Part shown: positions 505-53,381 of the stretch, piece by piece
How positions within the stretch are numbered: the first letter of the stretch is position 1
How the letters are laid out: every line of letters begins with the position of its first letter
Source: Lytechinus pictus
Taxonomy: Eukaryota
Direction of reading: 5' to 3'
DNA length: 64,000 nt
NCBI RefSeq assembly: GCF_037042905.1
Contig: NC_087258.1
Location: 27,590,001 to 27,654,000 of the forward strand
Translations under genes and position numbers: made by a program
The notes under the pieces: generated by a model
Seen by the model: only the letters and a program-made list of their open reading frames with translations
Told to the model about the DNA's origin: nothing
The model's database searches: none

Positions 505-2460
505 ATGAGTGGCAGACTTCAGAGGGATTTGCAGAGCTGCCCAACATCCACAGGTCCAGATGTCCTATCTATAGTAAGTATGGCAGCATCTAGAGAGGAA
601 CCTCTTAATGAAAGTAGTGAACAATGTCTAAGGGTTAATGATTGCCAGATAAACTTAGTGACATACATGACAACAGAGATGTATAATCTTCAAGACTTCA
701 GGGATTTTATTGATAGGAATCATGGAAACATAAATATTGATCAGAGAAATGAGGAGGGTCAAACTGCTCTCATGAGAGCTTGTCTTGATAGAAACAAAGC
801 AGTTGTGGAGTTTCTGTTAGAGAAAGGAGCAGATCCTAATTTGAGATGCATAAGAGAGGGAAATACTGCTCTACACTTTCTTAGCCGAAGTCGACCATGC
901 TGTGACACAGAAAGCGAGACAGACTTGGAAGATTGGGAACCTATTCTCGACAACGTGTCAGAAGCCGAGAGCAGTTGCAAAGACTTCTTGACTCGGGAAA
1001 GCCAAGATGATACTTACAACCGTTTGATCATGAAGAACTGCTTGGATGAAAAATACTGTCAATATACTGTGTTTAAAAAGCAGAAGAGAAGTGCTAGAAT
1101 AATAGATACTTTAATATTACAGTACGGTGCTTTGATTCAGGTCAACAATTATGGATTGACGCCTGCAGATATTGCTGGGCTACATAGGAAACTATCAACT
1201 GTGTTGTACTACATAAATCGAGAATATATTCCAAAGTCAGAGCAAACAACAGCGTTAGAAATCATGGGATCGTCGTTCATGATGAAGGATGAGTATGAGA
1301 AAGCGTACAAAGCATTTACAATGGCAGTAGAAAAGTGCTATGATAATCCACACACTGAGCAAGGCAATATCAAGAAATCTGATTTAGAAGATTGTCTAGG
1401 TCGCTCGGAATGCAGGAGTCTCCATGACCTCAGAAAGATTAATGGTGACAAATATGCAATGAGAGTTGAAGGTATGCTGGTTGCGGATCGTGTCTTACCC
1501 GATTCACTGAAGGAAGAATTTATTTATGAACGTCTTGTGGATTATGGATATTCCTTATTGTTTCTGTGGGATACGCTGGATGCAGGCTTCAGGGTGTTCA
1601 CAAAATGTCTTTGTCTAGAACGCAAAGGATGTTTGCCTGTTGGAAGGGTCCTTTTGTCATTGAGGTACAGCATCAGCCAAGCTACAAGCTCTCCAAGCCT
1701 ACATAGGTTTATTCCACAATATGTGAGTCTACTTTGTCAGTCTTTAGAGCTTTGTATTGATGTCATCAGGCAGGTCAATGTTAAAAACCTTAAAAGCCAC
1801 ATCCAGGAAATTCTAATCAATCTATCCAAGATCTTATATTCCTTCACTAATAGTCTTTGCAGTGTCCAAGGTGTGGAATGTGTGATTCGGCCAGTTGTCC
1901 AGATGATCAAAGTCATATGGAGCAGGTTAGACAGAGCTTCAGTCTTCAGGGATCCATACAGACACCTCACCAACTCTGTCTGTCATAAGTTACTTTGTGA
2001 TATGGTTGCGCACTTTAGATACTACTTTGACTTTGAGGAAAACAGGAACACTTGTCACTGTTTCAAGCAAGTACTTGTCCACTTAGTCCAAGTTGAAGGT
2101 GCCTCAGATATTGATATCAATGGAGATACCCTTCTGCATTCATTGATGGGTCTTGTGTTCTCGGGAGAGATTCCGATGGTTCAAGACATATCTCTTCTAT
2201 TTCTAAGGTATGGCTGTCCGTACAATTTGAGGAATAATAGAGGGAAGAGACCTATTGATGTTGCACAGGAAGAGGCTTTTAGTCTTGATGATTCCTACCT
2301 TTCAGATCTTACTGAGCTCTACAGTCTCCTGTCTTCTACTGTACTCACTTTACAGGAGATTGCTATCAGAACTATTCTAAGGTGTAACATCCCTTATCAG
2401 GATAAACTTCCCAGGAAGCTCTGTTCCATGATACAGGTGGATCCGGTGGAATTTCCTTAA
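505..2460 (+). CDS. FEM1-like: FEM-1-like ankyrin/TPR-like/VHL-box protein, paralog 1 (single coding exon; alternative start MAAS at 580)
   Basis: 651-aa ORF. ANK motifs GQTALMRAC..GADPN..GNTALH and GLTPADIA; FEM1-type ALEIMGS and ECRSLHDL..DKYAMRVEGMLVADRVLP; C-terminal ANKs GDTLLH and NNRGKRPID; BC-box TLQEIAIRTI and Cul2-box LPRKLCSMI. Splice acceptor AG at 499-500. Confidence 0.88.
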   Translation: MSGRLQRDLQSCPTSTGPDVLSIVSMAASREEPLNESSEQCLRVNDCQINLVTYMTTEMYNLQDFRDFIDRNHGNINIDQRNEEGQTALMRACLDRNKAVVEFLLEKGADPNLRCIREGNTALHFLSRSRPCCDTESETDLEDWEPILDNVSEAESSCKDFLTRESQDDTYNRLIMKNCLDEKYCQYTVFKKQKRSARIIDTLILQYGALIQVNNYGLTPADIAGLHRKLSTVLYYINREYIPKSEQTTALEIMGSSFMMKDEYEKAYKAFTMAVEKCYDNPHTEQGNIKKSDLEDCLGRSECRSLHDLRKINGDKYAMRVEGMLVADRVLPDSLKEEFIYERLVDYGYSLLFLWDTLDAGFRVFTKCLCLERKGCLPVGRVLLSLRYSISQATSSPSLHRFIPQYVSLLCQSLELCIDVIRQVNVKNLKSHIQEILINLSKILYSFTNSLCSVQGVECVIRPVVQMIKVIWSRLDRASVFRDPYRHLTNSVCHKLLCDMVAHFRYYFDFEENRNTCHCFKQVLVHLVQVEGASDIDINGDTLLHSLMGLVFSGEIPMVQDISLLFLRYGCPYNLRNNRGKRPIDVAQEEAFSLDDSYLSDLTELYSLLSSTVLTLQEIAIRTILRCNIPYQDKLPRKLCSMIQVDPVEFP

Positions 2461-4101: not shown

Positions 4102-6045
4102 ATGGCTTCTACTGGACCTGTAGCATCATCCAGTGTGAAAGACAGTAGCAGTTCTAGAAGAGAGGGTCATCTGGTCAGGATCATTGAGGATGATGCCACA
4201 CTGGCAATGGTTCAGGATTTCATCAAGCAGCAGGATGGGAAGTCTGACTTGAATGAGAGAAATAAGCATGGTCAGACGGCATTGATGGTGGCATGTTTGC
4301 ATGGTAAGCTGGAAATTGTGAAGTATCTTCTTGAGATAGGAGCCGATCATCATCTTACCGCACCTGACAAAAAGAACACTGCGTTGCACTTTGCTTGCAT
4401 GTTCATGCAAAGCATCAGTGAAGCAGACAGTGCACTGAAAGGAGAAAAGACTGTAGAAGGGGCTAAAAATCCAGCAAGTGGAGAAGCCAAAGGAGATGGT
4501 TTAGAGGCTCATTTTGATACCAAAGCAGATACGATTGTATTACAACTTATCCTTAACCTCCTGTTGCACAAAGCCAAATTCCAGAAGAATGATGATGTAC
4601 TATATCCACTTGACTTAGCTGCATTGAACAAGAGACTCGCTGTCTTTGCTTTCCTTGGCAGTAAAGATCTAGTGGAAAAGTCTATGCTTGCTAGGGGATT
4701 GGACATTCTGGGTTACTTATTGGCTCTGGAGGATAAACATAAAGATGCAGCAAGAATACTGGAAAAAGCTGTGATGGAAAGGGAGAGTGACACTGACAAT
4801 CCAGATCCTGTCGAATTCACATCAGATCTTGAAACTTTCCTCAGTCAAAAAGAGTGCAAGACAATGGCAGATTGGAACGCATTGAAGAAAACTAATCATG
4901 CAACCAAAGTTAATGCTTTCCTTGTTGGTGATCGTGTTCTTCCAGAGAAGTTGAAGCCAAAGGTACTGTATGGACCACTTGCAAAATACGGACATGAGTT
5001 GCTTTTCAAGATGAAAACAAGGGCTAAAGGGTTTCTCATATTTGATGCATGTCTTCATCTGGAAAGGAAAGGATTGCTTTATTTGAATACTGTTTTGATG
5101 TACCTGCGGATGAGTATACCTAGAGCAGAAACCCTTGATATTTTCAGAGATACTCAGTTTATTAACAGCACATGCAAGACGTTAGGAAAGTACATTGATG
5201 TCATAAAAGATGTCCCCATTGATCATCTTGAGAAAAGTGTCAAAGACATCATGTGCAACCTTGGTCGTATCCTGTTTGATGTAGTTAATGAATATCAAAG
5301 TCTTGAAATCTTGGAGCAGTTTCTCACACCCATCATAGAGATAATCAATGTCATTTGGGATAGGATTCCAAAGCCTGAAGCTACTGGCAGTGGTATCCTG
5401 TTCCCCACTATTTCTGTCTGTCACAATGTTCTGCTTCACCTGGGAAGAGAGTTCTGTCCAAATATCTTCTTCTGTGCCCCTCATCCCTCCAGGACACGCA
5501 GGTACATCACTTTCCTCTCCGAGCGGTTGATTGCTAGTCTTCTGCATGTTGAAGGTGCCCTTGATTTAGACTGTCATGGGAACACGATGATTCACACGCT
5601 GATGGTGTACTCACAAACATTATCACCACAACTGATTATAGATATTGCAAAGCTCCTGATAAGACATGGCTGCCCTACTGATGCAAAGAACAAGAAAGGG
5701 GAAACCCCCTATGACATCAACATGGAAATGAGAGAAAATGAAGATGACTTTGATGATGAAGATGATTTTGAGGATGAGGATGGAGATGAACCTCGCCTAC
5801 AACTGGACCCACGTGGAATGGGCATTGTGTATGAGCTCTTGAAGGGTCCAGAAGAAGTGTATTCTCTTCAAGAGCTTGCTGCAAGGTCTATCCTTAGCTA
5901 TAGGATTCCTTATCGCCAGAAGCTTCCATCTACACTGTTTGCTATTCTAAGAGACCCAGTCTTGGATGAAAATTATGAAGCTGGAGACTCTGAGACATCT
6001 AGTGACTATGATTCAGATGATGAACAAAACTGCCCAATATCTTGA
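4102..6045 (+). CDS. FEM1-like: FEM-1-like ankyrin/TPR-like/VHL-box protein, paralog 2
   Basis: 647-aa ORF. NKHGQTALMVACLHGKLEIVKYLLEIGAD..NTALH resembles FEM1 ANK5-6; ECKTMADW..FLVGDRVLP; GNTMIH and NKKGETP; SLQELAARSIL..IPY..LPSTLFAIL. Acceptor TTTTGCCTCTTTTCAG ends at 4021, branch-like CTAAT at 3991. Confidence 0.9.
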   Translation: MASTGPVASSSVKDSSSSRREGHLVRIIEDDATLAMVQDFIKQQDGKSDLNERNKHGQTALMVACLHGKLEIVKYLLEIGADHHLTAPDKKNTALHFACMFMQSISEADSALKGEKTVEGAKNPASGEAKGDGLEAHFDTKADTIVLQLILNLLLHKAKFQKNDDVLYPLDLAALNKRLAVFAFLGSKDLVEKSMLARGLDILGYLLALEDKHKDAARILEKAVMERESDTDNPDPVEFTSDLETFLSQKECKTMADWNALKKTNHATKVNAFLVGDRVLPEKLKPKVLYGPLAKYGHELLFKMKTRAKGFLIFDACLHLERKGLLYLNTVLMYLRMSIPRAETLDIFRDTQFINSTCKTLGKYIDVIKDVPIDHLEKSVKDIMCNLGRILFDVVNEYQSLEILEQFLTPIIEIINVIWDRIPKPEATGSGILFPTISVCHNVLLHLGREFCPNIFFCAPHPSRTRRYITFLSERLIASLLHVEGALDLDCHGNTMIHTLMVYSQTLSPQLIIDIAKLLIRHGCPTDAKNKKGETPYDINMEMRENEDDFDDEDDFEDEDGDEPRLQLDPRGMGIVYELLKGPEEVYSLQELAARSILSYRIPYRQKLPSTLFAILRDPVLDENYEAGDSETSSDYDSDDEQNCPIS

Positions 6046-6159: not shown

Positions 6160-6790
6160 TTTTTGTCTCACGTGCATAGCAAAGCAAGACTATAGGTGCC
6201 GCTTTTTTTCCAATGGCGACGGTAATGTCATCAGCATTGAAATCTTTGAAATGTCATCATTTCTTAAAAAGTATATGGAGTTGGTTCATGAAACTTGGAA
6301 ATAGGGTAATCAAGTATTACAGAACATTTTGCCTGAGTTTCAGATCATACAATCTTGGTCAAAGGTTATTTAGGATCAATGAACTTAATAGACCATGTTG
6401 GGGGAATCAACATAAAAAACCTAACCAAGGTTAAGTTATTTAATGGGTCATCATAACTTAGAAAGTATATGGACCTACTTCGTGTAACATGGACATAAGG
6501 GTAATCAAGTGTTACTGAACATCCTGCCTGAGTTTAGGTCACATGACCAAGATCAAAGGTTATTTAAAGTCAATGAACTTTGGCCATGTTTGGGGTATTT
6601 GTTGAATTGCCATAACTTTGAAAGTTTATGGATATACATAAGGGTAATCAAGTATCACTGATCATCTTGCACAAGTCATAGGTCACATGATCAAGGTAAA
6701 ATGTCATTTAGGGTCAATGAACACAGTATTTTATTATCATATGAATGGTGTTTTTGTCAATAATTATTCTATAGTCGTTTTCAAAGTAGG
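6160..6790. repeat. Helentron/HINE-like interspersed repeat (GGTCAAAGGTCA family)
   Basis: Begins TTTTGTCTCACGTGCATAGCAAAGCAAGACTATAGG; internal ~170-bp subrepeats containing CATAAGGGTAATCAAGT; related copy at ~31595-31890. Confidence 0.55.
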
Positions 6791-10655: not shown

Positions 10656-10734
10656 TTTATGGACATGGCCTCAACCCTCACCAATTCAAACATTATCGAA
10701 GGAGGAATTTATGATGTGCATTAAGAGGTACAAT

Positions 10735-14905: not shown

Positions 14906-17550
14906 GCTCTTGATCTAGTTAATTACGGGAACTTGTGTTCTTTTTAATGAACACATTCATATCTATATCAAAATAAATACTTTTAGTATTTTCATACTGA
15001 TCATATCGGGTGTAAAATTGCAATGAAAAGAATAATTACCACCTAATGGTCTGTGCAAATCTAAAATACTTTAGTTCCATTACACTTTCTGGTCTTCATT
15101 TATCAGTCTTTTGATCTACACAACCCTCTGTACAATAACAAACAGTTAAACATCCCCCCCCCCATGTTTGCAATTCACATAAAAGTGTACCCCCCTCGAC
15201 ATTAAAAAGGCGAAGCCATGGCCGTACGCAAAATGAAACATTTCTGCTGGGGGGGGGGCAGGAGGCATAATCTTTTTAGATAAATATCGGAAGCGAGGGA
15301 GCAAAGCAACCGAGCTTGTCATTGGGGCGCCTTTGCATTTTGTCATATGAAATTAAAGGTTTTCATGCATAATTTTTGTGAATTTGGGAAAATCTGCAGT
15401 GAAAAAATTTAAATTTTCAAAATTTCTGTGTCGCAAAGATCTGCCGTTCTGCCCCCGATGCATACGACAATAGGCAGAACAATGTTCATTATTTTCTTCA
15501 ACAGCTCTGACTCTCGAACTCTGGCGTTAAAGAGCTCAGATCAACTTGGAATATGTTAAGCAGGTGGATCTTTCCAAAGTTAGATTTCTTTGTTTCAACA
15601 GTTTGATGTCTTCTAAGTTCTACTTAATATTTCTTATAATCTATTTCTTCAGGAACGTCAGTATTTGATAAATAAAAAAAAAAAAATTCTTAGGCCATGT
15701 CAACTTTTTCCAATTGCGAATTTTGTCTAAGGCTAACAGAGAGTTTTAGAGGAAAAATAAAAGGTTTTTTGTTTCATTTAATTTCTAGTACCAATATCCT
15801 CCTAAAATTCTACAGAATGACTTGTAATCTATAAGAATTTTCTACAAAAATAGTTATATCATCAGTATATAATTTTGTTAAACTGCCGTTTCACCACGCA
15901 AATATCGAATACAGTACCCTTTACTTAATTACGAATGCAATGCGTTATAGACATTGTAATGTATAAATTAACTAAAAAGGGGAATTTGGAGAGAGGGGAT
16001 CCCCACTTGTCTTAGCTCCTGCTAAAGATTTTAGGACCAGTCGTCTCGAATTCGGAGGTCGGCCCTAACATAATATTATTGTGAGCGCGAAGAATTTGCT
16101 TATAATGTCCCTTAATTGTTAGGTCTGAATACCAAAAAATTTCAGCTCGCGCTTCGCGCTCGCATTATTTGATCAGTGAGATACATATTCGTTTAATGGC
16201 ACTGTCCTTAAAATGCCTCTATTAGGTCAGTATACTTAGCAACTGAGCGCGCTTCGCTCAATAAGCAATAAGTGACTCAAAATTTTTGCTGGTGCCCCCC
16301 AATCCCCCCAATGCCGTGACCCACGGTAGGTCTACGCCACTGGAGATATGTACTCACCAAACAAAATGCGAGCGCGCAGCACTAGCTGATAGGCCTCCCC
16401 TTTTGACAATCACGTCTGAAAAGGGATATTTTGAGAACTGTATGGAATTCACAAATGAGACAATAGGAATTTGGCAAAACAAATAATGCGACCCCGCAGC
16501 GTACTTGAGCTAAAAATTTTAAATATATTGACTTCAAAACTTGGATATTTTAAGCTCCATATTATTGGCCTATTGAGTAAAATATGAATATCACCGAACA
16601 ACAGACAATGAGATAGCGAAGAGCGAGCGAAAATATATAGCACGGTTTTATTTTTGCAACTCCTTCCCTCACCATGCCATGGACCTACGTGTAATACGTA
16701 TAGACAGTAGCGGAGTATATAGTAGGTCCCTCACTTATAATTATTCACTCGTCTTCCTTCTTCAATTCAACTTCAATATATTTATTCAACCATCATCAAG
16801 TTAAACAATTACATAAATACATACCAATATTGATAATTATACAAGTACTAAATATACTATAGAATGATGGTTTGTGACCCCGGAGAAAGCAGAGCTTATA
16901 TAAAGGGGCCACCGAGTTAAGGTTAAAAATGTACATTGAAAATATTTGAATGATATGATATAGTACCGATGCAACAGCGGAAAAAATTCTCTTTCCCCTT
17001 CTTTTTCTTTATTCTTTCTTTCATTTTCCCTTTTTCTATTTCCCTTTTTTTTTGCTCTGCCAGTTTTTGTTCAGGGGGGGGGGCATGGGTACGTGCCCCC
17101 CCCCCCCCCACCCCCGCACCTCGAATCATCAAGCTGCAGTGCGCGCGGTGTCGAGACGTACGTACGTGTATAGACATATAACAGTACTAGTATACATCTC
17201 TATGGTTAGTTATGAAGTTCTGCTTTTTCTGGTAAGTGAAACTTTTTTTGTTTTTTATGCTTCACAGCCAATTGTACTATTCGTAGAGTATGATAATTAA
17301 AATAAAGAAAAAATATGAAGGAATAGGGTCGATAAAGTGACACGCACATGTGTGTATGCGCAGCGATTATGTTGACATTGTAATAATCTTTGTATTTGTA
17401 CTGTCGTGGGCGTGGCAAATTCTAATGCACGAATGAAGAGGGTGATATCACAATTCCTTGATATTTGTGTTCGAGAAGCACATGAGTGAAATCTCTAGCT
17501 TACTTGTACGGCTTGTCGATCGTGGGGGATGGGAGGGATGGATCTGAGTA

Positions 17551-27250: not shown

Positions 27251-27470
27251 ATGACCGGAATGAACATGATTCATATTGAGGAAGTGTTCTTTCCCAAATT
27301 GTGTTATGTTTTTCATTGGCAACAAGTTTCCTCTTTCAGGTCATGTGCGTTAGAATTTTACTGAAAAGCACTTAAAAAATGTAGAAAACTTATTACAATA
27401 TCGTTTAGTAATTATTGTTTCCTTTTGTAGATTCTTGAGGCATTGGTCCGAGATCCATACTGATATCCTG

Positions 27471-31300: not shown

Positions 31301-32230
31301 TTAATTTAGGTGAATTCCCAATAGTGCATGTCAGTATTTCAATTCATTTCTGCATGTAGAATGGTTTATAAAGTGAAGAATATAACAAAATGTGCTCTAT
31401 TGGTTTGATTAACAGATTTAACCTCAAAATTTATTTCATCAGGTGTCTTACCAAAATGAAATACCTTCATATTTCAATTTTGTTAACCAGCATATTATAA
31501 AACCTCTTTTCAAGAATGGAATGAACCTATAATTTCAGGAAATACTCATATATCCAATGCTAAATACATAAAGTACATGTGCGCAAAGGGCTATTCTGTC
31601 TCACCTGCATAGCAGAGCGAGACTATATGTGCCATGTTGTGGGTAATTGTTGCCATCTCATAACTTTGAAGTTTATGGATATAGTTAATGAAATGTGGAC
31701 ATATGGCTAAGCCAGTATCATTGCTCAGTACTGTAGGTCACTTGATCAAGGGACAATGAAAGTAGTATATTAGTATATGAATAGTGTTTTTTTAATGATT
31801 GTGTCATAGTCAATATCAAAGTCAGCACTGATGCTACATGTACATTGAATTGCGTAATGCAGGCGAGACTGTCAGAGGCGCTCCACTTGTTTATTTACTG
31901 AGAGTGAGTGCTAGATTTTGAATTTGAACAGCTGAAAATAATTCTATGGCAGCATCCACACTTTTTATTATTGAAATTTCAGTTGATAATTTCATATAAT
32001 TCACATTACTGACCCTGTATCAAAGCTTTAGATACACTTTTAAACTTCCCTCAAATTGAGAGCTTTGAATGTTCTTGGCAAATAGAGTCAATAGGAATAT
32101 CTTTGTCTTTCCTCTGTCTTGTAGTCAAACTCTATCTTTTGAGCAATATAGTAGGAGAATTAAAACCTGGGATATTCATATTCATTTCCTCCTCAGATTC
32201 TTGAGGCCTTTGTCTGATATCGTCATCCTG

Positions 32231-33952
32231 ATGGCATCGGTCATAGAAAGTGGTTGCGCAGAAGATGGAAATTGTCGTATTGATGAGTGGATCAAAGATG
32301 GTGTTGACTTAGTACATCTCATTGAGCACAGACAGTGTAATGTGGATGGTGTGAGACGGTACCTTGATTCTTCAGGTGATCCTTCTTGTGTTAACAGATG
32401 TAATCACTTGGGACAAACACCCCTGATGGTCGCCTGCAAATATAGACAGAAAGACATTGTTAATCTCTTGTTGGAAGCTGGAGCTGACCCTAACCTGACT
32501 TGCACTGTCAGTGGTAGCACTGCTCTTCATTATGCCTGTCAAGGGGAAGAAAATCTCATTCAAAAGTGTAGAGAGGAACCAAACTTCCCTCAATTTGCCC
32601 TTGAAGACGTCGTAGAGATTGTGACAGAACTTTGCAATCAGGGCGCAGTTCTGAAGATGAATGATGAGGGATTGAGTCCAGTTTGTGTTGCAGCTTTGAA
32701 CAGTTTCAAAGATGTAGTGGATTACTTTGTTTCCAGCTCTGTTGTTTCAACGCCTGTTGATGTCAAGGTCAAAGCATATGAACTTTTGGGAGTTTCGCAG
32801 GCAGTCTTTGATAAGCACCATACTATGGATGCCTGTAAATCATTTCATCTAGCTGCATCTTTTCATTCTTCTGAGAATAGCGATGTAACACCTTGCCATG
32901 TCACCTCTGATCTTGATGCCTGGTTTGTAAATTTGATGGACAAAGAGAATCCAAGTGACTCTGAAAGGTTTGAGGTCAAGGCAAAAGCTTTCATCTTTGG
33001 TATGCAGTCTTTGCCACATAAAACCAGGGATAGACATGATTTCTACAGAGAAATGAGTGAATGTGCCCGAAGCGCTTTGTTTAAGGGCAAAGCTCCACAG
33101 GATGGATACGAAATGCTTTTAAACCTTATTCATAGGGAGATGTCAGATGATTACCCTCTGGGATCTGTAATGGACATGATACAACATGCACTAGCACCCA
33201 GGCTGCGTCCTCTGCCACGCATATTTAAATATGTCAACAAACTGTTGGATGCGTACGCTAATGCATTTACAGCAGATACTTGTAGCACCCAGTTGAAAAT
33301 AAGGAAATGGGATATTGTTCAGAGCCTGGGTGAACTGATGTTCAATTATTCATATTATTACTCATCAAAATATCTTGAATCAAGCTTCCCGGCTGTGGCC
33401 ACTATCGTCAACTGCATCAAGCAGATATCTGCAGAGGACCTTGTGGGAGATGGCGGAAAGGTGTCAATCCTTGAAAGTTTTATTAATAAGTTGGCTGAAG
33501 CCATGTGGGAAGATATATACTGTGGTCAAAGCAAAGAAACCAGAAATAGGTTGAAGTTTACAATCTGCAGACTCCTCCATTTCACTGGTTTTGATCCAGA
33601 TATAGATCCATCTTTACTTGACACCTTTCTCCAAGTTGTTCGTGTTGCCTATGACACGGAGTGGATACTTGCTGTATCTTGCGTATTGATCCGTTATGGT
33701 TGTTCAACTGGAGTTGTTACCCTTGATGAGGGTATAGATGAGGATGATCCTGAAGTACAGGTACTTCTTTCACTCTTAAGCCCACCCACAACTCCTGTTC
33801 CTCTTGAGGAACTGGCTTCTCGGTTAATTCTCCGAACAAGGATACCTTACAGAGAGAGGCTTCCTGATGTCCTGTGTGAGAAAATAGAGGGTGAAAAGCT
33901 AACCCCCGATCCTTCTCAAATGTATTCATCACCAGAATTTGATGCAGATTAA
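32231..33952 (+). CDS. FEM1-like: FEM-1-like protein, paralog 5
   Basis: The ORF-track start at 32069 lies upstream of acceptor CCTCCTCAG|ATTCTTGAGG (AG 32195-32196); homologous MAS start at 32231. PLEELASRLIL..IPY..LPDVLCEKI. Confidence 0.88.
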   Translation: MASVIESGCAEDGNCRIDEWIKDGVDLVHLIEHRQCNVDGVRRYLDSSGDPSCVNRCNHLGQTPLMVACKYRQKDIVNLLLEAGADPNLTCTVSGSTALHYACQGEENLIQKCREEPNFPQFALEDVVEIVTELCNQGAVLKMNDEGLSPVCVAALNSFKDVVDYFVSSSVVSTPVDVKVKAYELLGVSQAVFDKHHTMDACKSFHLAASFHSSENSDVTPCHVTSDLDAWFVNLMDKENPSDSERFEVKAKAFIFGMQSLPHKTRDRHDFYREMSECARSALFKGKAPQDGYEMLLNLIHREMSDDYPLGSVMDMIQHALAPRLRPLPRIFKYVNKLLDAYANAFTADTCSTQLKIRKWDIVQSLGELMFNYSYYYSSKYLESSFPAVATIVNCIKQISAEDLVGDGGKVSILESFINKLAEAMWEDIYCGQSKETRNRLKFTICRLLHFTGFDPDIDPSLLDTFLQVVRVAYDTEWILAVSCVLIRYGCSTGVVTLDEGIDEDDPEVQVLLSLLSPPTTPVPLEELASRLILRTRIPYRERLPDVLCEKIEGEKLTPDPSQMYSSPEFDAD

Positions 33953-35689: not shown

Positions 35690-36055
35690 ATGACATCTGC
35701 AAGTGACCATCCAGAACTCAGGGATCCTTCTTGTCATAAGAAGATTGATCAGTGGATCAAAGATGGTATTGATTTGGTGTGTCCAATTGACAATGGGGAG
35801 AGATGCACATGGTGTGAGACAATATCTTGCTTTGTCAAGCAATCCCATTGACAAAAGGAATGAGACAGGACAAACACCATTGATGATTGCATGCAGAAAT
35901 AGAAAGACATTGTTAATATCTTGTTGGAAGGCGGAGGTAACCCTAATCTGACTTGCACTGTCAATGGTAGCACTGCCCCCATTATGCCTGCGAAGGGGAG
36001 GAAAGTTTTACATGTTGAAATAATCCAAACCATCCAACGCAGGAGCTTCAAACAC
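35690..36055 (+). pseudogene. Truncated, frameshifted FEM-1-like pseudogene (5' fragment)
   Basis: MTSASDHPELRDPSCHKKIDQWIKDGIDLV, VRQYLALSSNPIDKRNETGQTPLMIACRNR and PNLTCTVNGSTA lie in different frames; homology ends at ~36055. Confidence 0.85.
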
Positions 36056-37599
36056 TCCAGGGGGGGGGCAATATGCAGTCATCATTTGGGGATGACTTAC
36101 ACAAATATCTTTCTCTGAATAATGAGGACTCTTGTCCAATTTCATGGTTGTTTTGCTTTTTTATACAGTTTTGAATTTTAGTTCTCATTTCTTTTGTATG
36201 TTCTTCATCCATTTTACATCAAAACTAGTGAAAAAGGAATTTCCTTTATTGACAATAAAGTTATTATATTCTATAAACCTGGATCTCAAATACATACAAC
36301 AAGGCAAGCACATAATACACCCACCTGTAATGCAGAAAATGGAGTTATTGGTCAAAGAAAAGTGGAAGGTGGCAACTTCACCTTTGACCTTCCTTTGACC
36401 TTCTAACCTCAAAATCAAAAGAATTCCTGGGATCTTTGGACACTGAATTGTATGAGCCTAGAATAAGTTGAACTGAAGTTATCGCGTTTACAAAGACTGC
36501 AGAAGGTTAAAATGAAAACTTGTCACTGTGACCTTGTCCTTTGACCTTTTGACCTCAAAATCAATAGGCTTCCTGGGATCCATGCTAGTATCATACACAC
36601 CAAATTATATGAGCCAAGATAAGTTAAACTGAAGTTATCACATTTACAAGGAAAAGTTAATGGATGACGGACGGACACCGAGCATGATACCATAATATGT
36701 CCCGGAGAACGGGCGTATAAAAATGAAGTGACATTAAAAAAAGGTCGTCATAAACGGAGCACCCCCCATTTGCTTGGTTGCTGGAGGATTTTTATTTTAA
36801 AAAGATAATGTCATGTATAAAAACAAACAACAGGTTATTCTATTTCATCCTGGAATTTTTTCTTTCTCCACCTATCTGTATCTAACAATGAAATCAATAG
36901 TTTCAATAATAAACATAAAATTGCTAGAATAAAAATTTATGGTCATCCTGTCATTTGTATACACAATAATCAATACTATCATGATCATCATGTACTCTCT
37001 CCTCATCATCATTATCATACTTGTTACGTGCTTCATCACATATATTCTGATGTTTGAGCAGATGATACCCCCACCCCCCCCCCCACCTGAAATATTGGTG
37101 GGGATATCCCCCAGCCCCCTGTGATTGACACCCATGCTGGGATCCAATACAGCTAGTAAACCAGTACAAGAGTCAAATTTTGTGCGCGCATTAACAGGTT
37201 ATAAATGGATATGAATGTATATGTTTTCAAAACATTTGATGATGGACTACACAGTTGGTTTAAAATGGAATCTCCAACTGATATAACTTGGATAGTATAA
37301 ATTATGCCTGCCTGTTTGACCTAAGACCTAAAAAAGACATTGTGTTGCCCTCAGTAGTCTGACCCACAGTAATGAAATAAATGCAAACAAAAAGATCGCT
37401 ATTTTATCTACATGTATTTTGTTTATGATAACATTTTTGCAGACACAAAATAGTTAAATGCAATGTTTTGGACAGAGACTGTCAGCTTTAGGCTGATGTT
37501 TTGCTTAAATTTGTATTCAGTGGCTTCAAAACACTTTAATATGTGTTTTTACTGCATATTACACATGTACATGTATATCATCCCATGCATGATTTTCTT

Positions 37600-38665: not shown

Positions 38666-39382
38666 CTAATGATGTGTCACATGATCTACCCGTCTGAAAG
38701 CATGCTGGTAGTCAGAAAGGATTGAGTTTGTAGTAAGGTGTGTCATTAGATGGCTGTCCACTATATGCTCCATAAGTTTACAGCATACACTGGTCAAGGA
38801 TATAGGGCGATAATTAGCCGGTTCATTTTTAGGACCCTTCTTGTAGATAGCAGCGATGTTCGCTTTACGCCAATCTTCGGGAAGGATCCCTTGGTCATTT
38901 GACTGTTTAAATATGAATTGCAGGACTGGAGCTATTTCTTCAGCTGTAATTTTAAGAACACGGTTTGGTATGCTATCTGGTCCTGCGGCCTTTAAAACAT
39001 CTAACTTGTTCAATAGCTTGAGGATGCCACTAACCATGAAGTTGATATCTGGCATATCAGGGATGTTTCTTGTTGGAAGGTTGGGGGTTTGGGTTTCGTC
39101 CCTGGAGAAGACGCTCTGGAACTGTTCGGCAAGTGCGTCTGCTTTCCCTTGGTCATCAGTGATGATTTCGTTTCCCTTCTTAAGGCTCTGGATCCCTACG
39201 TTGTCCTTGTGCCTGGTTTTAATGTATTTCCAGAACTGTTTATTACCGGCTTCTGAAAGAGTAGCTATGAATGTCCGTTGGGCTTTTCTAAGTTCTTTAT
39301 TTACTACTCTCTTAATTTTGTTGGTATTTGTCCAATCTATCTTGCCCTCCGAGTTGCTTCGCCTTTGAATAAGTTGTGCCAT
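38666..39382 (-). mobile_element. CR1/L2-group LINE reverse-transcriptase fragment
   Basis: KAAGPDSIP, LPEDWRKANIAAIYKKG..PANYRPISLTSVCCKLME, YQHAFR; truncated before YADD. Confidence 0.9.
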
Positions 39383-41452: not shown

Positions 41453-41580
41453 CTGATTATCAGTAGTTAGAAACTTGCCTGGGCTGTGACCATAAAATTT
41501 TAGCACATTGGTATGAATTCAAATTTTGAGCTCAATATTTGTTTTTATCCCCTCAGATTCTTGAGGCACTTGAGTTCCAT

Positions 41581-43326
41581 ATGTTCACACTGATGGCATC
41601 ATACATGGAAAGTAGTGTGAAGAATAAGATAGTTCAATGGATCAAAGACGGAGTTGATTTGGTGTCCATTATTGAAGGAGGAGAGATAGGAGATGCAGAG
41701 GATGTTAGACTGTACCTATCCTATTCAAGTGATCCTTGTGTTAACAGATGTAATGGATCAGGACAAACACCCTTGATGATTGCTTGCAGAAATAGACAAA
41801 AACACATTGTTAATATCTTGTTGGAAGCCAGAGCCGACCCTAACCTGACTTGCACTGTCAATGGTAGCACTGCTCTTCATTATGCCTGTCAAGGGGACAA
41901 ACATATGATTTCCATATGTCGGACTAAAATAAAGTACCCAAAACAGGAGCTTCAAAGAGTTATTGAGATCATTGAAATCCTGATCCACAATGGAGCAATA
42001 ATGCAAATGAATGATGATGGATTGAGTCCTGTGTGTGTGGCAGCTCTAAACAGCTTCAAAGATGTGGTGGAGTTCTTTTCATCAAATAGTGAAATTCCAG
42101 TGCCTCCCGGAGACATGGTCAAGGCATATGAATTGTTGGGAGTTTCACAAGCACTCTTTGATGTATACCATTTAGTTGATGCATGTCACTCCTTTCACCT
42201 TGCTGCATCTACATGGAAACATCCTGGAAATGAGAATGATTTATCTTCACTTAATGTTGACTGTGCCCTCGACAACTTCTTTACTCACATGACAACTCTT
42301 GTTCTCAACTGTGATCAGAGAAGTAAGATCAGGCAGAAGGCATTCACTATTGGTATTAAATGCATACCTGACAACGTGAAAAATAAATATGATTTCTGGC
42401 GATTTACATCCAGTTACACTGATCCAGCTTTCTTTGAGATTGGTTCAGAAGAGGGCTACAACCTCTTGTTGTCTTTGGTAAAGAAAGAAATGCTTGGGAA
42501 ATGTCCACTTGGAACTGTCCTGGACATGATTCAGAATGCATTGACGTCCAGATTGTCAACATCATTAGGGGTGAAGTTCATTCCAAGGTTGTTGCAGGCA
42601 TACGCAGAGGGATTCCAAGAAGATAGCAAGATGCTCAGAGAGAAAAGACCAGAGATCTTAGAACTATCGGGAGGTCTGTTGTTCAATTTTGCATACTACC
42701 AATCACAAGCAAAATATCTTGAGGAAGTGCTGTCATATGTCAAGGATATTCTGCATTGCATCAAGATGTATGCTGAAGATGGCTGTCCAACAACTGGTGA
42801 CCGTCCAGTATCAGTCATCTCTGTTTTCTTTGAAAACATGGCCAATACAATGTTTGACGATGTGTATTGTGGGCAGACCAAGGAAGCAAGGAATCGATTG
42901 AAGTATGTCATTTCCAGTCTCCTCTTCCACAACGGCTACGATCCTGCTTCACATTCTTCATTACTAGAAACACTGGTGAGGATTGTTGCTGCGGCCCATG
43001 ATAGAGATTTCATTATCCCAATTGCCAAGATGCTGATTCGATATGGTTGCCCACCGGACAGTGTTTGCATTGAGCAATCTGAGCAGGATTATCCAGAGGT
43101 GATGGAAATGTTGCCTCTTTTGAACCCAACGTCTCCTCCATCTCTTGAGGAGCTAAGCACACAAGTTATCCTGCGCAACAATGTTCCTTACAGAGAAAGA
43201 CTTCCAAGTTTGCTCTCTGAGAGAATAGATGCGGATATGTACTTCAGACCACCTCCTTCTGATTTAGATTCTTCTGTTTCTTCAGATTCTTCTGAGAAAT
43301 CAGATGAATTTGAGAGAATTGAATAA
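41581..43326 (+). CDS. FEM1-like: FEM-1-like protein, paralog 6 (homologous MAS start at 41593)
   Basis: Acceptor CCCCTCAG|ATTCTTGAGG (AG 41555-41556). GQTPLMIAC, GSTALHYAC, KAYELLGVSQ, SLEELSTQVIL..VPY..LPSLLSERI, Ser/Asp-rich tail. Confidence 0.88.
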   Translation: MFTLMASYMESSVKNKIVQWIKDGVDLVSIIEGGEIGDAEDVRLYLSYSSDPCVNRCNGSGQTPLMIACRNRQKHIVNILLEARADPNLTCTVNGSTALHYACQGDKHMISICRTKIKYPKQELQRVIEIIEILIHNGAIMQMNDDGLSPVCVAALNSFKDVVEFFSSNSEIPVPPGDMVKAYELLGVSQALFDVYHLVDACHSFHLAASTWKHPGNENDLSSLNVDCALDNFFTHMTTLVLNCDQRSKIRQKAFTIGIKCIPDNVKNKYDFWRFTSSYTDPAFFEIGSEEGYNLLLSLVKKEMLGKCPLGTVLDMIQNALTSRLSTSLGVKFIPRLLQAYAEGFQEDSKMLREKRPEILELSGGLLFNFAYYQSQAKYLEEVLSYVKDILHCIKMYAEDGCPTTGDRPVSVISVFFENMANTMFDDVYCGQTKEARNRLKYVISSLLFHNGYDPASHSSLLETLVRIVAAAHDRDFIIPIAKMLIRYGCPPDSVCIEQSEQDYPEVMEMLPLLNPTSPPSLEELSTQVILRNNVPYRERLPSLLSERIDADMYFRPPPSDLDSSVSSDSSEKSDEFERIE

Positions 43327-50580: not shown

Positions 50581-50973
50581 GGTAAATTGTCAATACGTCC
50601 ACTGCCAACTCGTCCACTCACCACATGGTCTACCTTCATTTAGTCTAATGCCATTCCGTCCAACATTTCGTCTCACAACCATTTGGTTCAATCATCACTT
50701 TGTCTAATCACCATTTTGTCTATTACCATTTCGTCTAATAACCAGTTGGTCTAATACCCACTTTTTTTTTCATTCATTTTGCACAATTAACACTTTAGTT
50801 TAATGAGGCCAAGTGGTATATGGACTAAATGGCCATTGAACCAACTGGTTATTAGACGGAATGGCATTAGACTAAATGAAAGTAGACCATGTGGTGAGTA
50901 GACGAACTGATGATAGACCAAATGGAAGGTGACAAGTTGGCAATTGGACAAATTGGCATAAGACGAGTAAACC
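50581..50973. mobile_element. MITE with TAGAC/GTCTA subrepeats
   Basis: CACCACATGGTCTACCTTCATTTAGTCTAATG / CATTAGACTAAATGAAAGTAGACCATGTGGTG; second copy at 63317-63720. Confidence 0.75.
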
Positions 50974-51482
50974 TCTCCATGGTTGGTCTTGAATCTTTGT
51001 GAAACAACATCCTGACGTTAGTTCATTTATTTTAAAACCTGATTGCATAATGGCTAATATAATTTGCACTCAAAACGCAAAATCCTTTTTGCAATGACCA
51101 CGTATATCCAAAACATTTCATACACTATGCAGCCTATACATCATAAACAACCAGCAAAGGAACATGTTAAGAAGCTCACCATTTATTGATCATTGGTAAT
51201 TCAATTATTTATAAGGACGGATATTCATCAAGGGTTCCATCCAGACCAAATTGGTTGAGCCCATAAAGGCTATCTGAGAAGTAAAACAACTCGTTGTATA
51301 CCAAGTGAATATAATCCTAAAAGAACCCCCCCCCTTACAAAGTTTGCAATTGGATATAAAGCATGACCATCTTGGCGATCATTCGTCATACAGACTTTGT
51401 TATTAACTTTATTCTAAAAAATTTTGTATATTTTCTTTTTTGTGTACAGATTCTTCAAGTTTGGTGCAGATGATCACCAATC

Positions 51483-53381
51483 ATGAGTAAGAAGAAGAAA
51501 GACCACATTAAAGGCCAAAGAGACCCCATCAATCTTGCCTCTATTATGATTGAAGTACGTGAATCCCGAGATACATGTCTCGTACTCAGTGTGGCCAGAA
51601 TTAAATCACTCTGTTCTACTCGCGAGGTGGATGTGAATTCTAGGAACCACCTTGGATGGTCACCTTTGATGATTGCATGTATGCACACAAACAATGAATT
51701 GGTTAGCCTTCTACTCGAGCATGGTGCTGACCCGAATGCTACAAGCACCAAAGGGGGTAACACACCTATGCATTTTGCATCAGTGGGATGCAATTGCTGC
51801 TGCTTGTGGGGAGAAAGCTGCGATTTATTCGATAGCTACCTTAACAAGGTAGCCAAGAAGCCAAGAATAGACATGATGAGGAACCTGATCAGTCATGGAG
51901 CAACCCTGCAGTGTAATTCTGATGGGTTGGATCCCCCATCATTTGCTGCACTACACAGATTCAAGGCTGCTGTGGACTTTTTCGTCAACAGAGGCACGTG
52001 TAGATTAAAGGTACCCGCTGAACAGAAAGCACGAGCCTGTGAAATCTATGCTGTGGTGCTTGCATTGACTATGGGCTTTTGCAAAGGTGATGATGTGACT
52101 CCTCATGAATATCTCTGTAAAGCGTTTGCTATCCGGAAGGGTAGTGGAGTGCCAGTACCAGATCAGGAGAGAGTAGGAATAGCCAATCATTTTCATTTAT
52201 TTAGAACAAAGCGGGCATGCACCACCGAAAAGGATTGGCAACGAATTCAATCTGACAATTGGGCTGTAAGAATTCAGTGCTTCCTAGTTGCAAGTAGAGT
52301 GTTACCAGTGAAAAAGAGGGACATATATCTCTTTCCAAGACTTCTAGCCCATGGACATGATTGTTATCTCTTTTCCAAAGGAAATGAACGGCGTTCTGAG
52401 GGTACTCAAATATTTGAGGAAGCAGTCCGATGGGAATTGAAGTCCACCACGGCCAAGCTGGGGAGTGTCCTGCAGATGATCCTTAATGTCCTCTACGTCA
52501 TTTTCTTTGTTAGGCGAGATATTCAGCTTAAACATGACCTGTTTGGGGAGTGCTACAAGCTTCTTGAACTATGTCTTCAAGAATTCACGGAACTCTCAGA
52601 TGCTCGTCTACACAAGTTTGCAACAGAGTTGGCCCATGATCACCTGGGAGCATTCCTGTATCATGTTCCTCTCTTTGATTTCTCCATGTCAAAGGAAATG
52701 TTCAAGTCACTTCTTCAGGTCTTTGGACGTATGATTTCCATGATGAGAAGAAGATGTGGAAGAAGTTCCCCATCAGTTACCCACTATATTATGGATAGGA
52801 TGGCTCAAATACTCTTGGACTCTGATAGTAAGGGTACATTGAAAGAAAACCGTTTGAAGCTGCTCATTTCAGCTCTAGTTCAGTGTGAAGATGCGACACA
52901 GATAAGTGACAGTGGTAATTCGATGTTGCATCCTTTGTTCAATATTATCGCGTTCGATCTGTATCCGTCGTTACTCCGGGATGTGTCTCTTATCCTTATC
53001 CGCAATGGATGTGATCCTGATGTTCGCAACGCTGATGGTAAGACTGTAAAAGAGATGTTTGTTAATTACGTATTCTTTGATCCAAACTCACCCAAGGACA
53101 AACAAGTGGTGACTGTCATCTCTCCGCCAACAGAAGTTTTGAGATTGGAAGAGATAGCAGCTAGGAAAATCTTGCGTCACAAGATCCCCCATGAAGGTAT
53201 TCTGCCGAGACACCTGTCTGTCATGGTTAAAGGAGAACCCGAACCAGACGCCAAGCTCTTTCTTTCAAGTCCTCCAAGATTTAATTTTAAGTATGGTGAT
53301 TGGAATTACGATGATGAGAGTTTGGATGAGTCCGATGATGATGATGATGATGATAGTTGGGATGGCGAGAATTATAATTAG
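51483..53381 (+). CDS. FEM1-like: FEM-1-like protein, paralog 7 (long subfamily, Cys-rich insert)
   Basis: 632 aa. GWSPLMIAC..GADPN..GNTPMHFA, ACTTEKDW..DNWAVRIQCFLVASRVLP, GNSMLH, NADGKT, RLEEIAARKIL..IPH..LPRHLSVMV, poly-Asp tail. Acceptor TGTACAG|ATTCTT (AG 51448-51449). Confidence 0.88.
   Translation: MSKKKKDHIKGQRDPINLASIMIEVRESRDTCLVLSVARIKSLCSTREVDVNSRNHLGWSPLMIACMHTNNELVSLLLEHGADPNATSTKGGNTPMHFASVGCNCCCLWGESCDLFDSYLNKVAKKPRIDMMRNLISHGATLQCNSDGLDPPSFAALHRFKAAVDFFVNRGTCRLKVPAEQKARACEIYAVVLALTMGFCKGDDVTPHEYLCKAFAIRKGSGVPVPDQERVGIANHFHLFRTKRACTTEKDWQRIQSDNWAVRIQCFLVASRVLPVKKRDIYLFPRLLAHGHDCYLFSKGNERRSEGTQIFEEAVRWELKSTTAKLGSVLQMILNVLYVIFFVRRDIQLKHDLFGECYKLLELCLQEFTELSDARLHKFATELAHDHLGAFLYHVPLFDFSMSKEMFKSLLQVFGRMISMMRRRCGRSSPSVTHYIMDRMAQILLDSDSKGTLKENRLKLLISALVQCEDATQISDSGNSMLHPLFNIIAFDLYPSLLRDVSLILIRNGCDPDVRNADGKTVKEMFVNYVFFDPNSPKDKQVVTVISPPTEVLRLEEIAARKILRHKIPHEGILPRHLSVMVKGEPEPDAKLFLSSPPRFNFKYGDWNYDDESLDESDDDDDDDSWDGENYN

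What the first reader, a model, noticed from the sequence alone, without database searches (positions are those of the whole stretch)
505..53381. Expanded tandem array of divergent FEM-1-like CRL2 substrate receptors
Seen: seven intact same-strand paralogs plus a pseudogene, each ending in a BC-box ([TSPR]LxExAxxxI/L) and Cul2-box (LPxxLxxxI), while the central helical region is extremely diverged between copies. Established: FEM1A/B/C are ElonginBC-CUL2 substrate receptors, normally low-copy and well conserved. Inference: a birth-and-death family that keeps the ligase-docking module constant and diversifies the substrate-binding surface. This is the pattern of immune-type E3 adaptor expansions (nematode F-box, fish TRIM), so it may be an intracellular pathogen-protein degradation repertoire or a germline-specific system.
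Basis: partly seen in the sequence, partly recalled or inferred. Interest (0 to 1): 0.85.

Follow-up and report, generated by a model that had tools for sequence, protein, structure and literature searches.

The report
Sea-urchin array of truncated FEM1-like receptors
This sea-urchin DNA carries seven working copies, plus one broken fragment, of a shortened FEM1-type adaptor that most likely hands proteins to the Cullin-2 degradation machine; the copies are old, conserved between species and expressed, so they look like a stable set of specialised adaptors rather than a fast-evolving immune arsenal.

Summary
There are seven intact plus-strand genes, each with its coding sequence on one exon (567-651 aa), and one frameshifted 150-codon 5' fragment. 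Every intact copy ends in a BC-box plus Cul2-box motif that occurs nowhere else in the window. The middle is the least conserved part.

"FEM1-like" is well supported:
- The non-ankyrin profile hits FEM1B and FEM1C first in the PDB, then the VHL box of LRR1.
- An AlphaFold model of c4 (pLDDT 85) matches only FEM1 proteins at the top of the PDB and Swiss-Prot searches.

The proteins lack FEM1 ankyrin repeats 1-3, and therefore the canonical C-degron pocket. Every named relative I looked up comes from a sea urchin (echinoid), labelled "uncharacterized" or "fem-1 homolog B/C-like".

The "birth-and-death, immune-type" reading is not supported:
- All seven genes have 1:1 orthologs in Lytechinus variegatus (90-95% aa identity).
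- Ortholog dN/dS is 0.19-0.55, roughly uniform along the protein and lowest in the variable centre (0.23-0.30).
- One clade split predates Strongylocentrotus.

c3 and c4 are transcribed. Contigs from one run suggest c3 and c4 share a 5' leader mini-exon at 17210-17231; this lead is not yet confirmed. Some other first-reader notes on this same window overlap these points.

The parts
505..2460 (+). c1: FEM1-like gene, clade A. The ATG is at 505 or at 580 (MAAS...); VHL box at 2347-2433.
   Evidence: ORF. phmmer to FEM1B at E 8e-15. The L. variegatus ortholog is 92% identical, with dN/dS 0.27.
4102..6045 (+). c2: FEM1-like gene, clade A; VHL box at 5863-5949.
   Evidence: The ortholog is 91-92% identical, with dN/dS 0.34.
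17210..17231 (+). Candidate 22-nt non-coding leader mini-exon (ag|TTATGAAG...TTTCTG|gtaagt), apparently spliced to both c3 and c4.
   Evidence: Contigs of run X1 carry the same leader sequence directly in front of the c4 acceptor (27430|27431) and in front of the c3 5'UTR (table 7). The leader maps here with 1 mismatch in 22 and sits between AG and GTAAGT splice signals. Only one copy exists in the window.
24027..25730 (+). c3: FEM1-like gene, clade B. The 5'UTR exon starts at 23986 after a splice acceptor; VHL box at 25578-25664.
   Evidence: Stranded RNA-seq reads cover the CDS. The ortholog is 92% identical, with dN/dS 0.35. S. purpuratus LOC100888333 is its sister in the tree.
27431..29210 (+). 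c4: FEM1-like gene, clade B. Acceptor at 27430|27431, ATG at 27471, VHL box at 29055-29141.
   Evidence: RNA-seq coverage. The ortholog is 95% identical, with dN/dS 0.19. The AlphaFold model has pLDDT 85.3 and its top fold matches are FEM1B/C.
32197..33952 (+). c5: FEM1-like gene, clade B. It has the same conserved acceptor (cag|ATTCTTGAGG), ATG at 32231 and VHL box at 33800-33886.
   Evidence: The ortholog is 90% identical, with dN/dS 0.55.
35690..36141 (+). Pseudogene: a frameshifted 5' fragment of about 150 codons, closest to c3, with no C-terminal half and no VHL box.
   Evidence: tblastn at E 5e-19 to c3 residues 7-154, spread over three reading frames with stops. The best nucleotide match is to L. 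variegatus c3, at 84%.
38666..39382 (-). Reverse-transcriptase (LINE-like) fragment between the pseudogene and c6.
   Evidence: A 238-aa ORF with a weak match to Pfam RVT_1, E 8e-5.
41557..43326 (+). c6: FEM1-like gene, clade B. Conserved acceptor, ATG at 41593, VHL box at 43141-43227.
   Evidence: The ortholog is 91-92% identical, with dN/dS 0.37.
51450..53381 (+). c7: FEM1-like gene, clade C. Related acceptor (cag|ATTCTTCAAG), ATG at 51483, VHL box at 53142-53228.
   Evidence: The ortholog is 93% identical, with dN/dS 0.23, but the L. variegatus copy carries a TGA at codon W57.

Best explanation
The window holds part of an old, sea-urchin-specific (echinoid) subfamily of FEM1-derived proteins.

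**Architecture (shown).** Each gene encodes, on a single coding exon, the following parts in order:
- a short N-terminal cap;
- about three ankyrin repeats, equivalent to FEM1 ANK5-7 with a degenerate ANK4;
- a TPR-like helical body;
- two to three C-terminal ankyrin repeats;
- a VHL box (BC box plus Cul2 box).

**Mechanism (inferred).** The VHL box docks the protein on Elongin B/C-CUL2-RBX1. The N-terminal and central repeats hold a substrate for ubiquitylation, as in CRL2-FEM1B/C.

**What differs from FEM1.** ANK1-3 are absent, so the canonical pocket for the C-terminal residue of a degron cannot be present. Specificity must come from the remaining concave surface, most plausibly the TPR3-5/ANK8 region, which differs most between paralogs.

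**Evolution (shown).** The three clades ({c1,c2}, {c3-c6}, {c7}) diverged long ago, and synonymous sites between them are saturated. Each gene is now kept under purifying selection along its whole length in two Lytechinus-grade species.

**Reading.** The array is best seen as a fixed panel of sub-functionalised E3 adaptors, each with its own conserved client set. It does not look like a rapidly turning-over repertoire. Within clade B, the 5' half has been homogenised by gene conversion or recombination.
For: **FEM1 homology**
- phmmer of c1 against FEM1B.
- Collinear profile match of the family to FEM1B 141-623.
- Profile with the N-terminal ankyrin repeats removed, against FEM1B, FEM1C and the LRR1 VHL box.
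- c4 model with pLDDT 85, whose top fold hits are all CRL2-FEM1B/C structures and FEM1 A/B/C, Drosophila and C. elegans FEM-1, aligned from c4 residue 46 to FEM1 residues 95-136 onward (mostly 95-103) and through to the C-terminus.
- ESM Atlas top clusters are 'fem-1 homolog B' at score 0.98.

**VHL box**
- In 40 family members the BC-box L and E are invariant. R, the I and Y of 'IPY', and the Cul2-box P are nearly invariant.
- The motif occurs once per gene and 0 times in shuffles.
- There is no Pfam SOCS_box hit.

**Functionality**
- Intact 1:1 orthologs in L. variegatus.
- dN/dS 0.19-0.55 per gene and 0.23-0.50 per region.
- Strand-specific RNA-seq reads over the c3 and c4 coding sequences, with near-zero intergenic depth.

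**Age**
- pS is 0.72-0.85 between clades in most regions.
- An S. purpuratus gene is sister to c3.
- Members are found in S. purpuratus, L. pictus, L. variegatus and Diadema antillarum.

**Mosaic history**
- For c3 versus c4, dS is 0.19 in the TPR1-2 tract, 0.55 in the N-terminal part, 0.84 in the VHL box and saturated in the centre.
Against: - No binding data exist. Docking to Elongin C/CUL2 rests only on motif and fold.
- Loss of ANK1-3 means the best-understood FEM1 degron pocket is missing, so the substrate-binding mode is a guess.
- Selection was measured with one species pair and Nei-Gojobori counts. Site-level positive selection in a few residues cannot be excluded.
- The tissue and conditions of expression are unknown, and only c3 and c4 were checked with reads.
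- c5 has a fairly high omega (0.55). The L. variegatus copy of c7 has a premature TGA and the window has a dead fragment, so some turnover does occur.
Confidence: 0.68

Rival explanations
1. The array is an immune-type or germline conflict repertoire: a birth-and-death family whose constant ligase-docking module is combined with a substrate surface under diversifying selection against pathogen or selfish-element proteins.
For: - Tandem array with very divergent centres and a conserved VHL box.
- One dead fragment in the window, and a nonsense codon in the L. variegatus c7 ortholog.
- Many additional paralogs on several chromosomes in each urchin.
- From general knowledge, sea urchins are known for large innate-immune gene expansions.
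Against: - Strict 1:1 orthology for all seven genes.
- dN/dS is 0.19-0.55, and the variable centre has the lowest values at 0.23-0.30.
- The ratio of non-synonymous to synonymous polymorphisms (11:12) is about the same as the ratio of fixed differences.
- The clade splits are ancient.
- There are no expression data tying the genes to immune cells.
Confidence: 0.12
2. c3-c7 are not independent genes. They are alternative 3'-terminal coding cassettes of one transcription unit: a shared promoter and leader upstream of c3 is spliced to the conserved acceptor about 35-40 nt upstream of one paralog's ATG, so each mRNA selects one receptor.
For: - Contigs of run X1 carry the same 15-27-nt leader in front of both the c3 and the c4 5'UTR exon, and for c4 exactly at the predicted acceptor 27430|27431.
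- The leader maps once in the window, at 17210-17231, between AG and GTAAGT signals.
- c4, c5, c6 and c7 share a near-identical acceptor plus 5'UTR start, and this is conserved in L. variegatus.
- No other leader copy lies between the genes.
Against: - The evidence comes from assembled contigs of one run whose RNA status is only guessed.
- The raw-read runs showed no qualifying joints, because the leader lay outside the stretch that was laid.
- The leader is not recognisably conserved in the roughly 6.5 kb upstream of L. variegatus c3.
- Use of the leader by c5-c7 is pure inference.
Confidence: 0.3
3. The proteins keep a VHL-box-like helix bundle only as a structural relic. They act as ankyrin/TPR scaffolds without ligase function, or they dock on CUL5 instead of CUL2.
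For: - Nothing here tests binding.
- Overall sequence identity to FEM1 is only 15-20%.
- The N-terminal degron pocket is lost.
Against: - The BC-box and Cul2-box positions are the most conserved part of 40 divergent members. This is unexpected for a relic.
- The motif is LPxxL, not the LPxP of Cul5 boxes, and there is no SOCS_box Pfam hit.
- The C-terminal profile also matches the VHL box of the CRL2 receptor LRR1.
Confidence: 0.1

Closest known systems
Human FEM1B / FEM1C (CRL2 substrate receptors; e.g. PDB 8IJ1, 8JE2, 8PQL, 9UA3)
   Same: - Collinear ANK-TPR-ANK-VHL-box architecture.
- These are the top sequence-profile and fold matches.
- The C-terminal BC box (LxxxA...) and Cul2 box (phi-PxxLxxx-phi) are in the same register.
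   Different: - The urchin proteins lack roughly the first 100-140 residues (ANK1-3, with ANK4 degenerate), and so lack the ANK3-4 pocket for the degron's last residue (PMC11053023).
- Identity is only 15-20%.
- Clade B has a shortened last ankyrin repeat.
- They are tandemly multiplied rather than single-copy.
C. elegans FEM-1 (sex-determination CRL2 receptor)
   Same: It is a fold match (rank 19 in Swiss-Prot, E 2e-6) with the same architecture and VHL box.
   Different: There is no evidence here for a role in sex determination, and the same N-terminal truncation applies.
PRAME family (expanded CRL2 substrate receptors in mammals)
   Same: As an analogy from my own knowledge and PMC5216831: a VHL-box receptor family multiplied in tandem arrays in one animal lineage.
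   Different: PRAME proteins are leucine-rich-repeat proteins and are not homologous. From general knowledge, PRAME copies turn over quickly, whereas these copies are stable between species.
ASB proteins (ankyrin repeat + SOCS box, CRL5 receptors)
   Same: An ankyrin-repeat substrate module plus a C-terminal Elongin BC box. ASB2 and ASB15 appear as weak fold hits (ranks 27-28).
   Different: - No SOCS_box Pfam match.
- The cullin box is of the Cul2 type (no LPxP).
- A TPR-like middle is present, and FEM1 proteins score far better.
Nematode F-box/MATH-BTB and fish TRIM expansions (immune-type E3 adaptor families)
   Same: Many paralogs that share a constant ligase-docking module and have divergent putative binding regions.
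   Different: Those families show rapid birth-and-death and positive selection (general knowledge). Here orthologs are 1:1 and omega is 0.2-0.55 with no elevated region.

Membership tests
FEM1 family (CRL2 substrate receptors) | C-terminal VHL box: a BC box ([STP]LxxxA/C/SxxxV/I/L) followed by a Cul2 box (phi-PxxLxxx-phi) | tested here: met
   The motif is present once in each of the seven proteins and 0 times in shuffles. L and E are invariant, and R, I, Y and P nearly invariant, in 40 members. The motif aligns to the FEM1B C-terminus and to the LRR1 VHL box.
FEM1 family (CRL2 substrate receptors) | TPR-like helical body and C-terminal ankyrin repeats collinear with FEM1B/C | tested here: met
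   The family profile aligns to FEM1B 141-623 in one stretch. The profile with the N-terminal ankyrin repeats removed has FEM1B and FEM1C as its top hits. The top 13 PDB fold hits and top 19 Swiss-Prot fold hits of the c4 model are FEM1 proteins.
FEM1 family (CRL2 substrate receptors) | Seven N-terminal ankyrin repeats, including the ANK3-4 pocket that holds the degron's C-terminal residue | tested here: not met
   Alignments start at FEM1 residues 95-141 against residue 46-52 of the urchin proteins. The pocket residues named in PMC11053023 (Tyr84, Trp93, Ser122, Arg126, Phe130) fall in the missing or degenerate part.
FEM1 family (CRL2 substrate receptors) | Orthology to FEM1A, FEM1B or FEM1C | tested here: not met
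   A canonical FEM1 (P0241; E 6e-112 to FEM1B) scores only 6e-7 against the family profile, whereas 30 family clusters score below 1e-30. In the tree it sits outside all 44 family members on a long branch; it was used as the outgroup, so this placement is not independent evidence.
FEM1 family (CRL2 substrate receptors) | Physical binding to Elongin B/C and CUL2-RBX1 | not testable with these tools
   Only single-chain structure prediction is available, and there are no biochemical data.
ASB / SOCS-box CRL5 receptors | SOCS box with a Cul5 box (LPxP) | tested here: not met
   No PF07525 hit at E<=0.01 in any of the seven proteins. The cullin box reads LP[DRS]x[L], without a second proline.
Immune-type diversifying E3-adaptor expansion | Rapid lineage-specific gene gain and loss | tested here: not met
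   All seven genes pair 1:1 with L. variegatus orthologs at 100% support, and an S. purpuratus gene is sister to c3. Only one dead fragment and one nonsense allele or ortholog were seen.
Immune-type diversifying E3-adaptor expansion | dN/dS above 1 in the putative binding region | tested here: not met
   Regional omega is 0.23-0.50, and the variable centre is at 0.23-0.30. Site-level tests across several species were not possible.
Immune-type diversifying E3-adaptor expansion | Expression in immune cells or induction on challenge | not tested
   The RNA-seq runs are coded and their tissue is unknown. They show only that c3 and c4 are transcribed.

The most novel reading that the evidence does not exclude
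c3-c7 form a 'one leader, many receptors' transcription unit. A single promoter and non-coding leader (mini-exon at 17210-17231) lies at least 6.8 kb upstream of c3. It is spliced to the conserved acceptor in front of one of several complete, single-exon paralog ORFs, skipping over the upstream paralogs. E3 substrate-receptor choice would then be made by alternative 3'-cassette selection, an inverted version of the protocadherin/UGT1A logic.
Probability: 0.25. Interest if true: 0.72.

Novelty: new variant of a known kind. Interest (0 to 1): 0.45.

Why it matters
FEM1 proteins are usually present in one to three conserved copies and read C-terminal degrons through ANK3-4. This finding describes a subfamily, seen so far only in sea urchins (echinoids), that has the following features:
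- it has lost that pocket but kept the VHL box;
- it has multiplied into tandem arrays on several chromosomes;
- each copy is conserved between species.

That gives a natural panel of CRL2 receptors with a common chassis and different centres. Such a panel is useful for asking how FEM1-type receptors generate specificity outside the known pocket, and which urchin proteins they control. NCBI pipelines already label some members 'fem-1 homolog B/C-like', and I found no paper on them. The finding is therefore an unexplored but unsurprising kind of E3-adaptor expansion. The possible shared-leader organisation would be the more unusual feature if confirmed.

Tried and rejected
1. **Loose end at 24011.** I first took the RNA-seq loose end at 24011 for a splice junction. 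It is an indel allele: the reads carry the 9-bp 'ATTGAGACC' version that L. variegatus also has.
2. **Fused 1155-aa model.** I considered whether the fused L. variegatus protein P0121 (c6+c7) shows a real two-domain gene. The c7 part starts just after a TGA at codon 57, so the model most likely splices around the stop.
3. **Leader in L. variegatus.** I searched for the leader mini-exon in the L. variegatus loci. It was not found in the roughly 6.5 kb upstream of c3, and only a block about 100 nt downstream of the window's leader is conserved.
4. **Exon ending 'TAATAG'.** I searched the window for an upstream exon ending in 'TAATAG' followed by GT and found none.
5. **Word-indexed search.** The search with the 22-sequence C-terminal alignment returned only 8 proteins. 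The exhaustive representative search was far more informative.
6. **Unnamed ENA members.** I tried to identify the source organism of the many unnamed ENA members. The two I looked up (P0145, P0169) come from sample ERZ26222911, with no DNA or organism available.
7. **Literature.** Searches for FEM1 together with sea urchin, echinoderm or Strongylocentrotus found nothing on this family.
8. **SOCS-box/ASB reading.** Rejected, because there is no Pfam hit and no LPxP motif.

Full report
**What is in the window.**
- Base composition is 35-40% GC throughout.
- Seven plus-strand ORFs of 567-651 aa lie at 505, 4102, 24027, 27435, 32069, 41539 and 51483. A reverse-transcriptase fragment lies on the minus strand at 38666-39382.
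- tblastn with all seven proteins finds one extra piece at about 35690-36141. It corresponds to residues 7-154 of c3, is spread over three frames with stops, and has nothing downstream.
- Each intact protein carries Pfam ankyrin hits only near the N-terminus.
- Each ends in a near-identical motif: [STPR]L[EQ]E[LI][AS]x[RQ]x[IL][LF], then IPY/IPH, then LPxxLxxx[IVL]. A strict regex finds it seven times in the six-frame translation and never in 50 shuffles.
Two adjustments are needed: c4, c5 and c6 start at internal 'MAS' ATGs (27471, 32231, 41593), and the pseudogene is only a 5' stump.

**Source organism.** The nearest public proteins are from Lytechinus variegatus, at 90-95% amino-acid identity. 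Flanking non-coding DNA is about 90% identical. The window therefore comes from a close relative of L. variegatus, possibly L. pictus; this was not established.

**Are they FEM1-like?** Yes.
- c1 matches human FEM1B by phmmer at E 8e-15, collinear over residues 204-639 and including the C-terminal motif.
- The seven-sequence profile aligns in a single stretch to FEM1B 141-623.
- To remove the effect of the N-terminal ankyrin repeats, I cut the alignment to the part downstream of them. Its best PDB hits are FEM1B (5e-8) and FEM1C (6e-7). The next is LRR1, another CRL2 receptor, matched only over its VHL box.
- c3 alone hits FEM1 only through the ankyrin/TPR1 part. I therefore modelled c4, from the most divergent clade, with a 40-sequence alignment. 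The model has mean pLDDT 85.3 and pTM 0.79.
- By Foldseek, the top 13 PDB hits are all FEM1B or FEM1C, most of them in CUL2-RBX1-EloBC complexes.
- The top 19 Swiss-Prot hits are all FEM1 A/B/C, the two Drosophila homologs and C. elegans FEM-1. They align c4 46-563 to FEM1 from residues 95-136 (mostly 95-103) through to the C-terminus.
- The ESM Atlas gives 'fem-1 homolog B' clusters at score 0.98.

**How they differ from FEM1.**
- FEM1B is built from ANK1-7, TPR1-5, ANK8-10 and a VHL box.
- In FEM1B the pocket for the degron's last residue is made by ANK3-4 (Tyr84, Trp93, Ser122, Arg126, Phe130). A second aromatic pocket is made by TPR3, TPR4 and an insertion in ANK8 (PMC11053023).
- The urchin proteins begin, in alignment terms, at FEM1 residue about 100-140. 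ANK1-3 are therefore missing, ANK4 is degenerate, and the first pocket cannot exist.
- The least conserved stretch of the family is c4 321-440. By the alignment, this maps roughly to FEM1B 390-500, that is TPR4-5 and the start of ANK8, which is the region of the second pocket. This gives partial, indirect support to the idea that the variable centre contributes to substrate choice.
- A canonical FEM1 (P0241; E 6e-112 to FEM1B) scores only 6e-7 against the family profile. Thirty clusters score below 1e-30, and about 50 have full-length matches.
- P0241 was set as the outgroup, so its position outside the family is by construction. It sits on a long branch of 2.45 substitutions per column.
- The family is FEM1-derived but is not FEM1A, B or C.

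**Distribution.**
- Every named member I looked up is from a sea urchin (echinoid): S. purpuratus, L. variegatus, L. pictus or Diadema antillarum.
- The names are 'uncharacterized protein' or 'protein fem-1 homolog B/C-like', and the genes lie on several chromosomes.
- Many unnamed divergent members come from ENA or Logan assemblies. The two I looked up both come from one sample of unknown host, and both are uninterrupted ORFs.
- Three literature searches found nothing on this family.

**Evolutionary dynamics.**
- L. variegatus has intact, collinear orthologs of all seven genes.
- In the tree each window gene pairs with its ortholog at 100% support. The paralogs fall into three deep clades, {c1,c2}, {c3,c4,c5,c6} and {c7}, and S. 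purpuratus LOC100888333 is sister to c3.
- Nei-Gojobori estimates for the seven ortholog pairs give dS 0.09-0.14 and dN/dS 0.19-0.55.
- Pooled by region, omega is 0.23-0.50. The highest value is in the ankyrin insertion loop, and the lowest values (0.23-0.30) are in the helical centre that differs most between paralogs.
- Variants seen in the RNA-seq reads are 11 non-synonymous to 12 synonymous. This ratio is close to that of the fixed differences in c3 plus c4, about 87 to 84.
- No comparison gives omega above 1.
- The paralogs therefore diverged long ago, and each is now conserved. This is sub-functionalisation, not an ongoing arms race.
- Some turnover exists: the stump at 35.7 kb, and a TGA at codon 57 of the L. 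variegatus c7 copy.

**Mosaic history in clade B.**
- Synonymous divergence is very uneven. For c3 versus c4, dS is 0.19 in c4 residues 181-260, 0.55 in the N-terminal third, 0.84 in the VHL box and saturated in the centre. The same pattern is seen in L. variegatus.
- Part of the 'constant ends, variable middle' picture therefore comes from gene conversion or recombination of the 5' half, which predates or accompanies the species split. It does not come from protein-level constraint alone.

**Expression and gene structure.**
- Three stranded, rRNA-depleted RNA-seq runs of the same species give reads on the sense strand over the c3 and c4 coding sequences. Depth is 2-14x from about 6% of each run, and almost nothing lies between the genes.
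- c3-c7 each have a splice acceptor about 35-40 nt upstream of the ATG. The acceptors of c4-c7 are nearly identical (cag|ATTCTTGAGG) and are conserved in L. variegatus. The coding sequence therefore sits on one exon behind a 5'UTR intron.
- Contigs of run X1 carry the same leader in front of the c4 acceptor (exactly at 27430|27431) and in front of the c3 5'UTR.
- Its last 22 nt map once in the window, at 17210-17231, flanked by AG and GTAAGT signals. This suggests that c3 and c4 share upstream non-coding exons, with c4 transcripts splicing over the whole c3 gene.
- I could not confirm this with raw reads. The leader is also not recognisable upstream of c3 in the L. variegatus DNA I hold.
- RNA-type contig sets of the same species hold about a third of the sampled 31-mer words from the c1-c2 stretch, which is weak evidence that at least one of those two genes is expressed.

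**Verdict.**
- The array is real and is FEM1-derived, and it very probably encodes CRL2 substrate receptors.
- It belongs to an old echinoid subfamily that lacks ANK1-3.
- The data contradict a fast birth-and-death or immune-type reading at the resolution available here.
- Substrates, tissue of expression and actual ligase binding remain unknown.
- The shared-leader organisation is the most unusual lead and needs only a read-level check.

Noticed in passing
window 17210-17231, with acceptors at 23985|23986 and 27430|27431: Contigs of run X1 put the same leader sequence in front of both the c3 and the c4 5'UTR exons. Its last 22 nt map to a mini-exon with AG and GTAAGT signals, 6.8 kb upstream of c3. 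This suggests a shared promoter, with c4 transcripts splicing over the whole c3 gene.
   Followed up: partly
L003:19319 (L. variegatus ortholog of c7); window 51657-51659: The L. variegatus copy of c7 has TGA where the window has TGG (Trp57). The 1155-aa fused c6+c7 L. variegatus gene model (P0121) resumes just after this stop, so the fusion is probably an annotation work-around.
   Followed up: partly
L002:12454-21740 versus L003:1-9480: The c5-to-c6 interval occurs twice in the L. variegatus assembly, at about 31.0 Mb and, reversed, at about 32.6 Mb of CM031028.1, at 98.5-99% identity. This is either an uncollapsed haplotype or misassembly, or a very recent segmental duplication.
   Followed up: no
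window 24606-24750 (c3 codons ~181-240) and the equivalent parts of c4 and c5: This tract is 89-95% identical at the nucleotide level among c3, c4 and c5, and third codon positions are 83-96% identical. The adjacent centre is at saturation. It is a gene-conversion or recombination tract, also present in L. variegatus.
   Followed up: yes
window 24009-24011 (c3 5'UTR): There is an indel polymorphism here. RNA-seq reads from two individuals carry 'ATTGAGACC', as in L. variegatus, where the window reads 'CT'. The reference allele is therefore a derived 7-bp net deletion.
   Followed up: yes
window 38666-39382 (-): A 238-aa ORF with a weak reverse-transcriptase (RVT_1) match. It is a LINE-like fragment lying between the pseudogene stump and c6.
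   Followed up: no
window 6242-6722; L001 15646-15910 and 20300-21870: A repeat unit of about 338 bp follows c2 (two copies at 76% identity). It is multiplied further downstream of c2 in L. variegatus.
   Followed up: no
window 9945-10049 and 14207-14311: A 105-nt direct repeat, 95% identical and 4.3 kb apart, inside the gene-free gap. It may be part of the duplicated module that another first-stage note flagged.
   Followed up: no
P0145, P0169 and other unnamed representatives (ENA sample ERZ26222911): The two unnamed representatives I looked up come from one ENA assembly of unknown host, and many other divergent full-length members are unnamed ENA entries. One unidentified animal may therefore carry a large expansion of its own.
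   Followed up: partly
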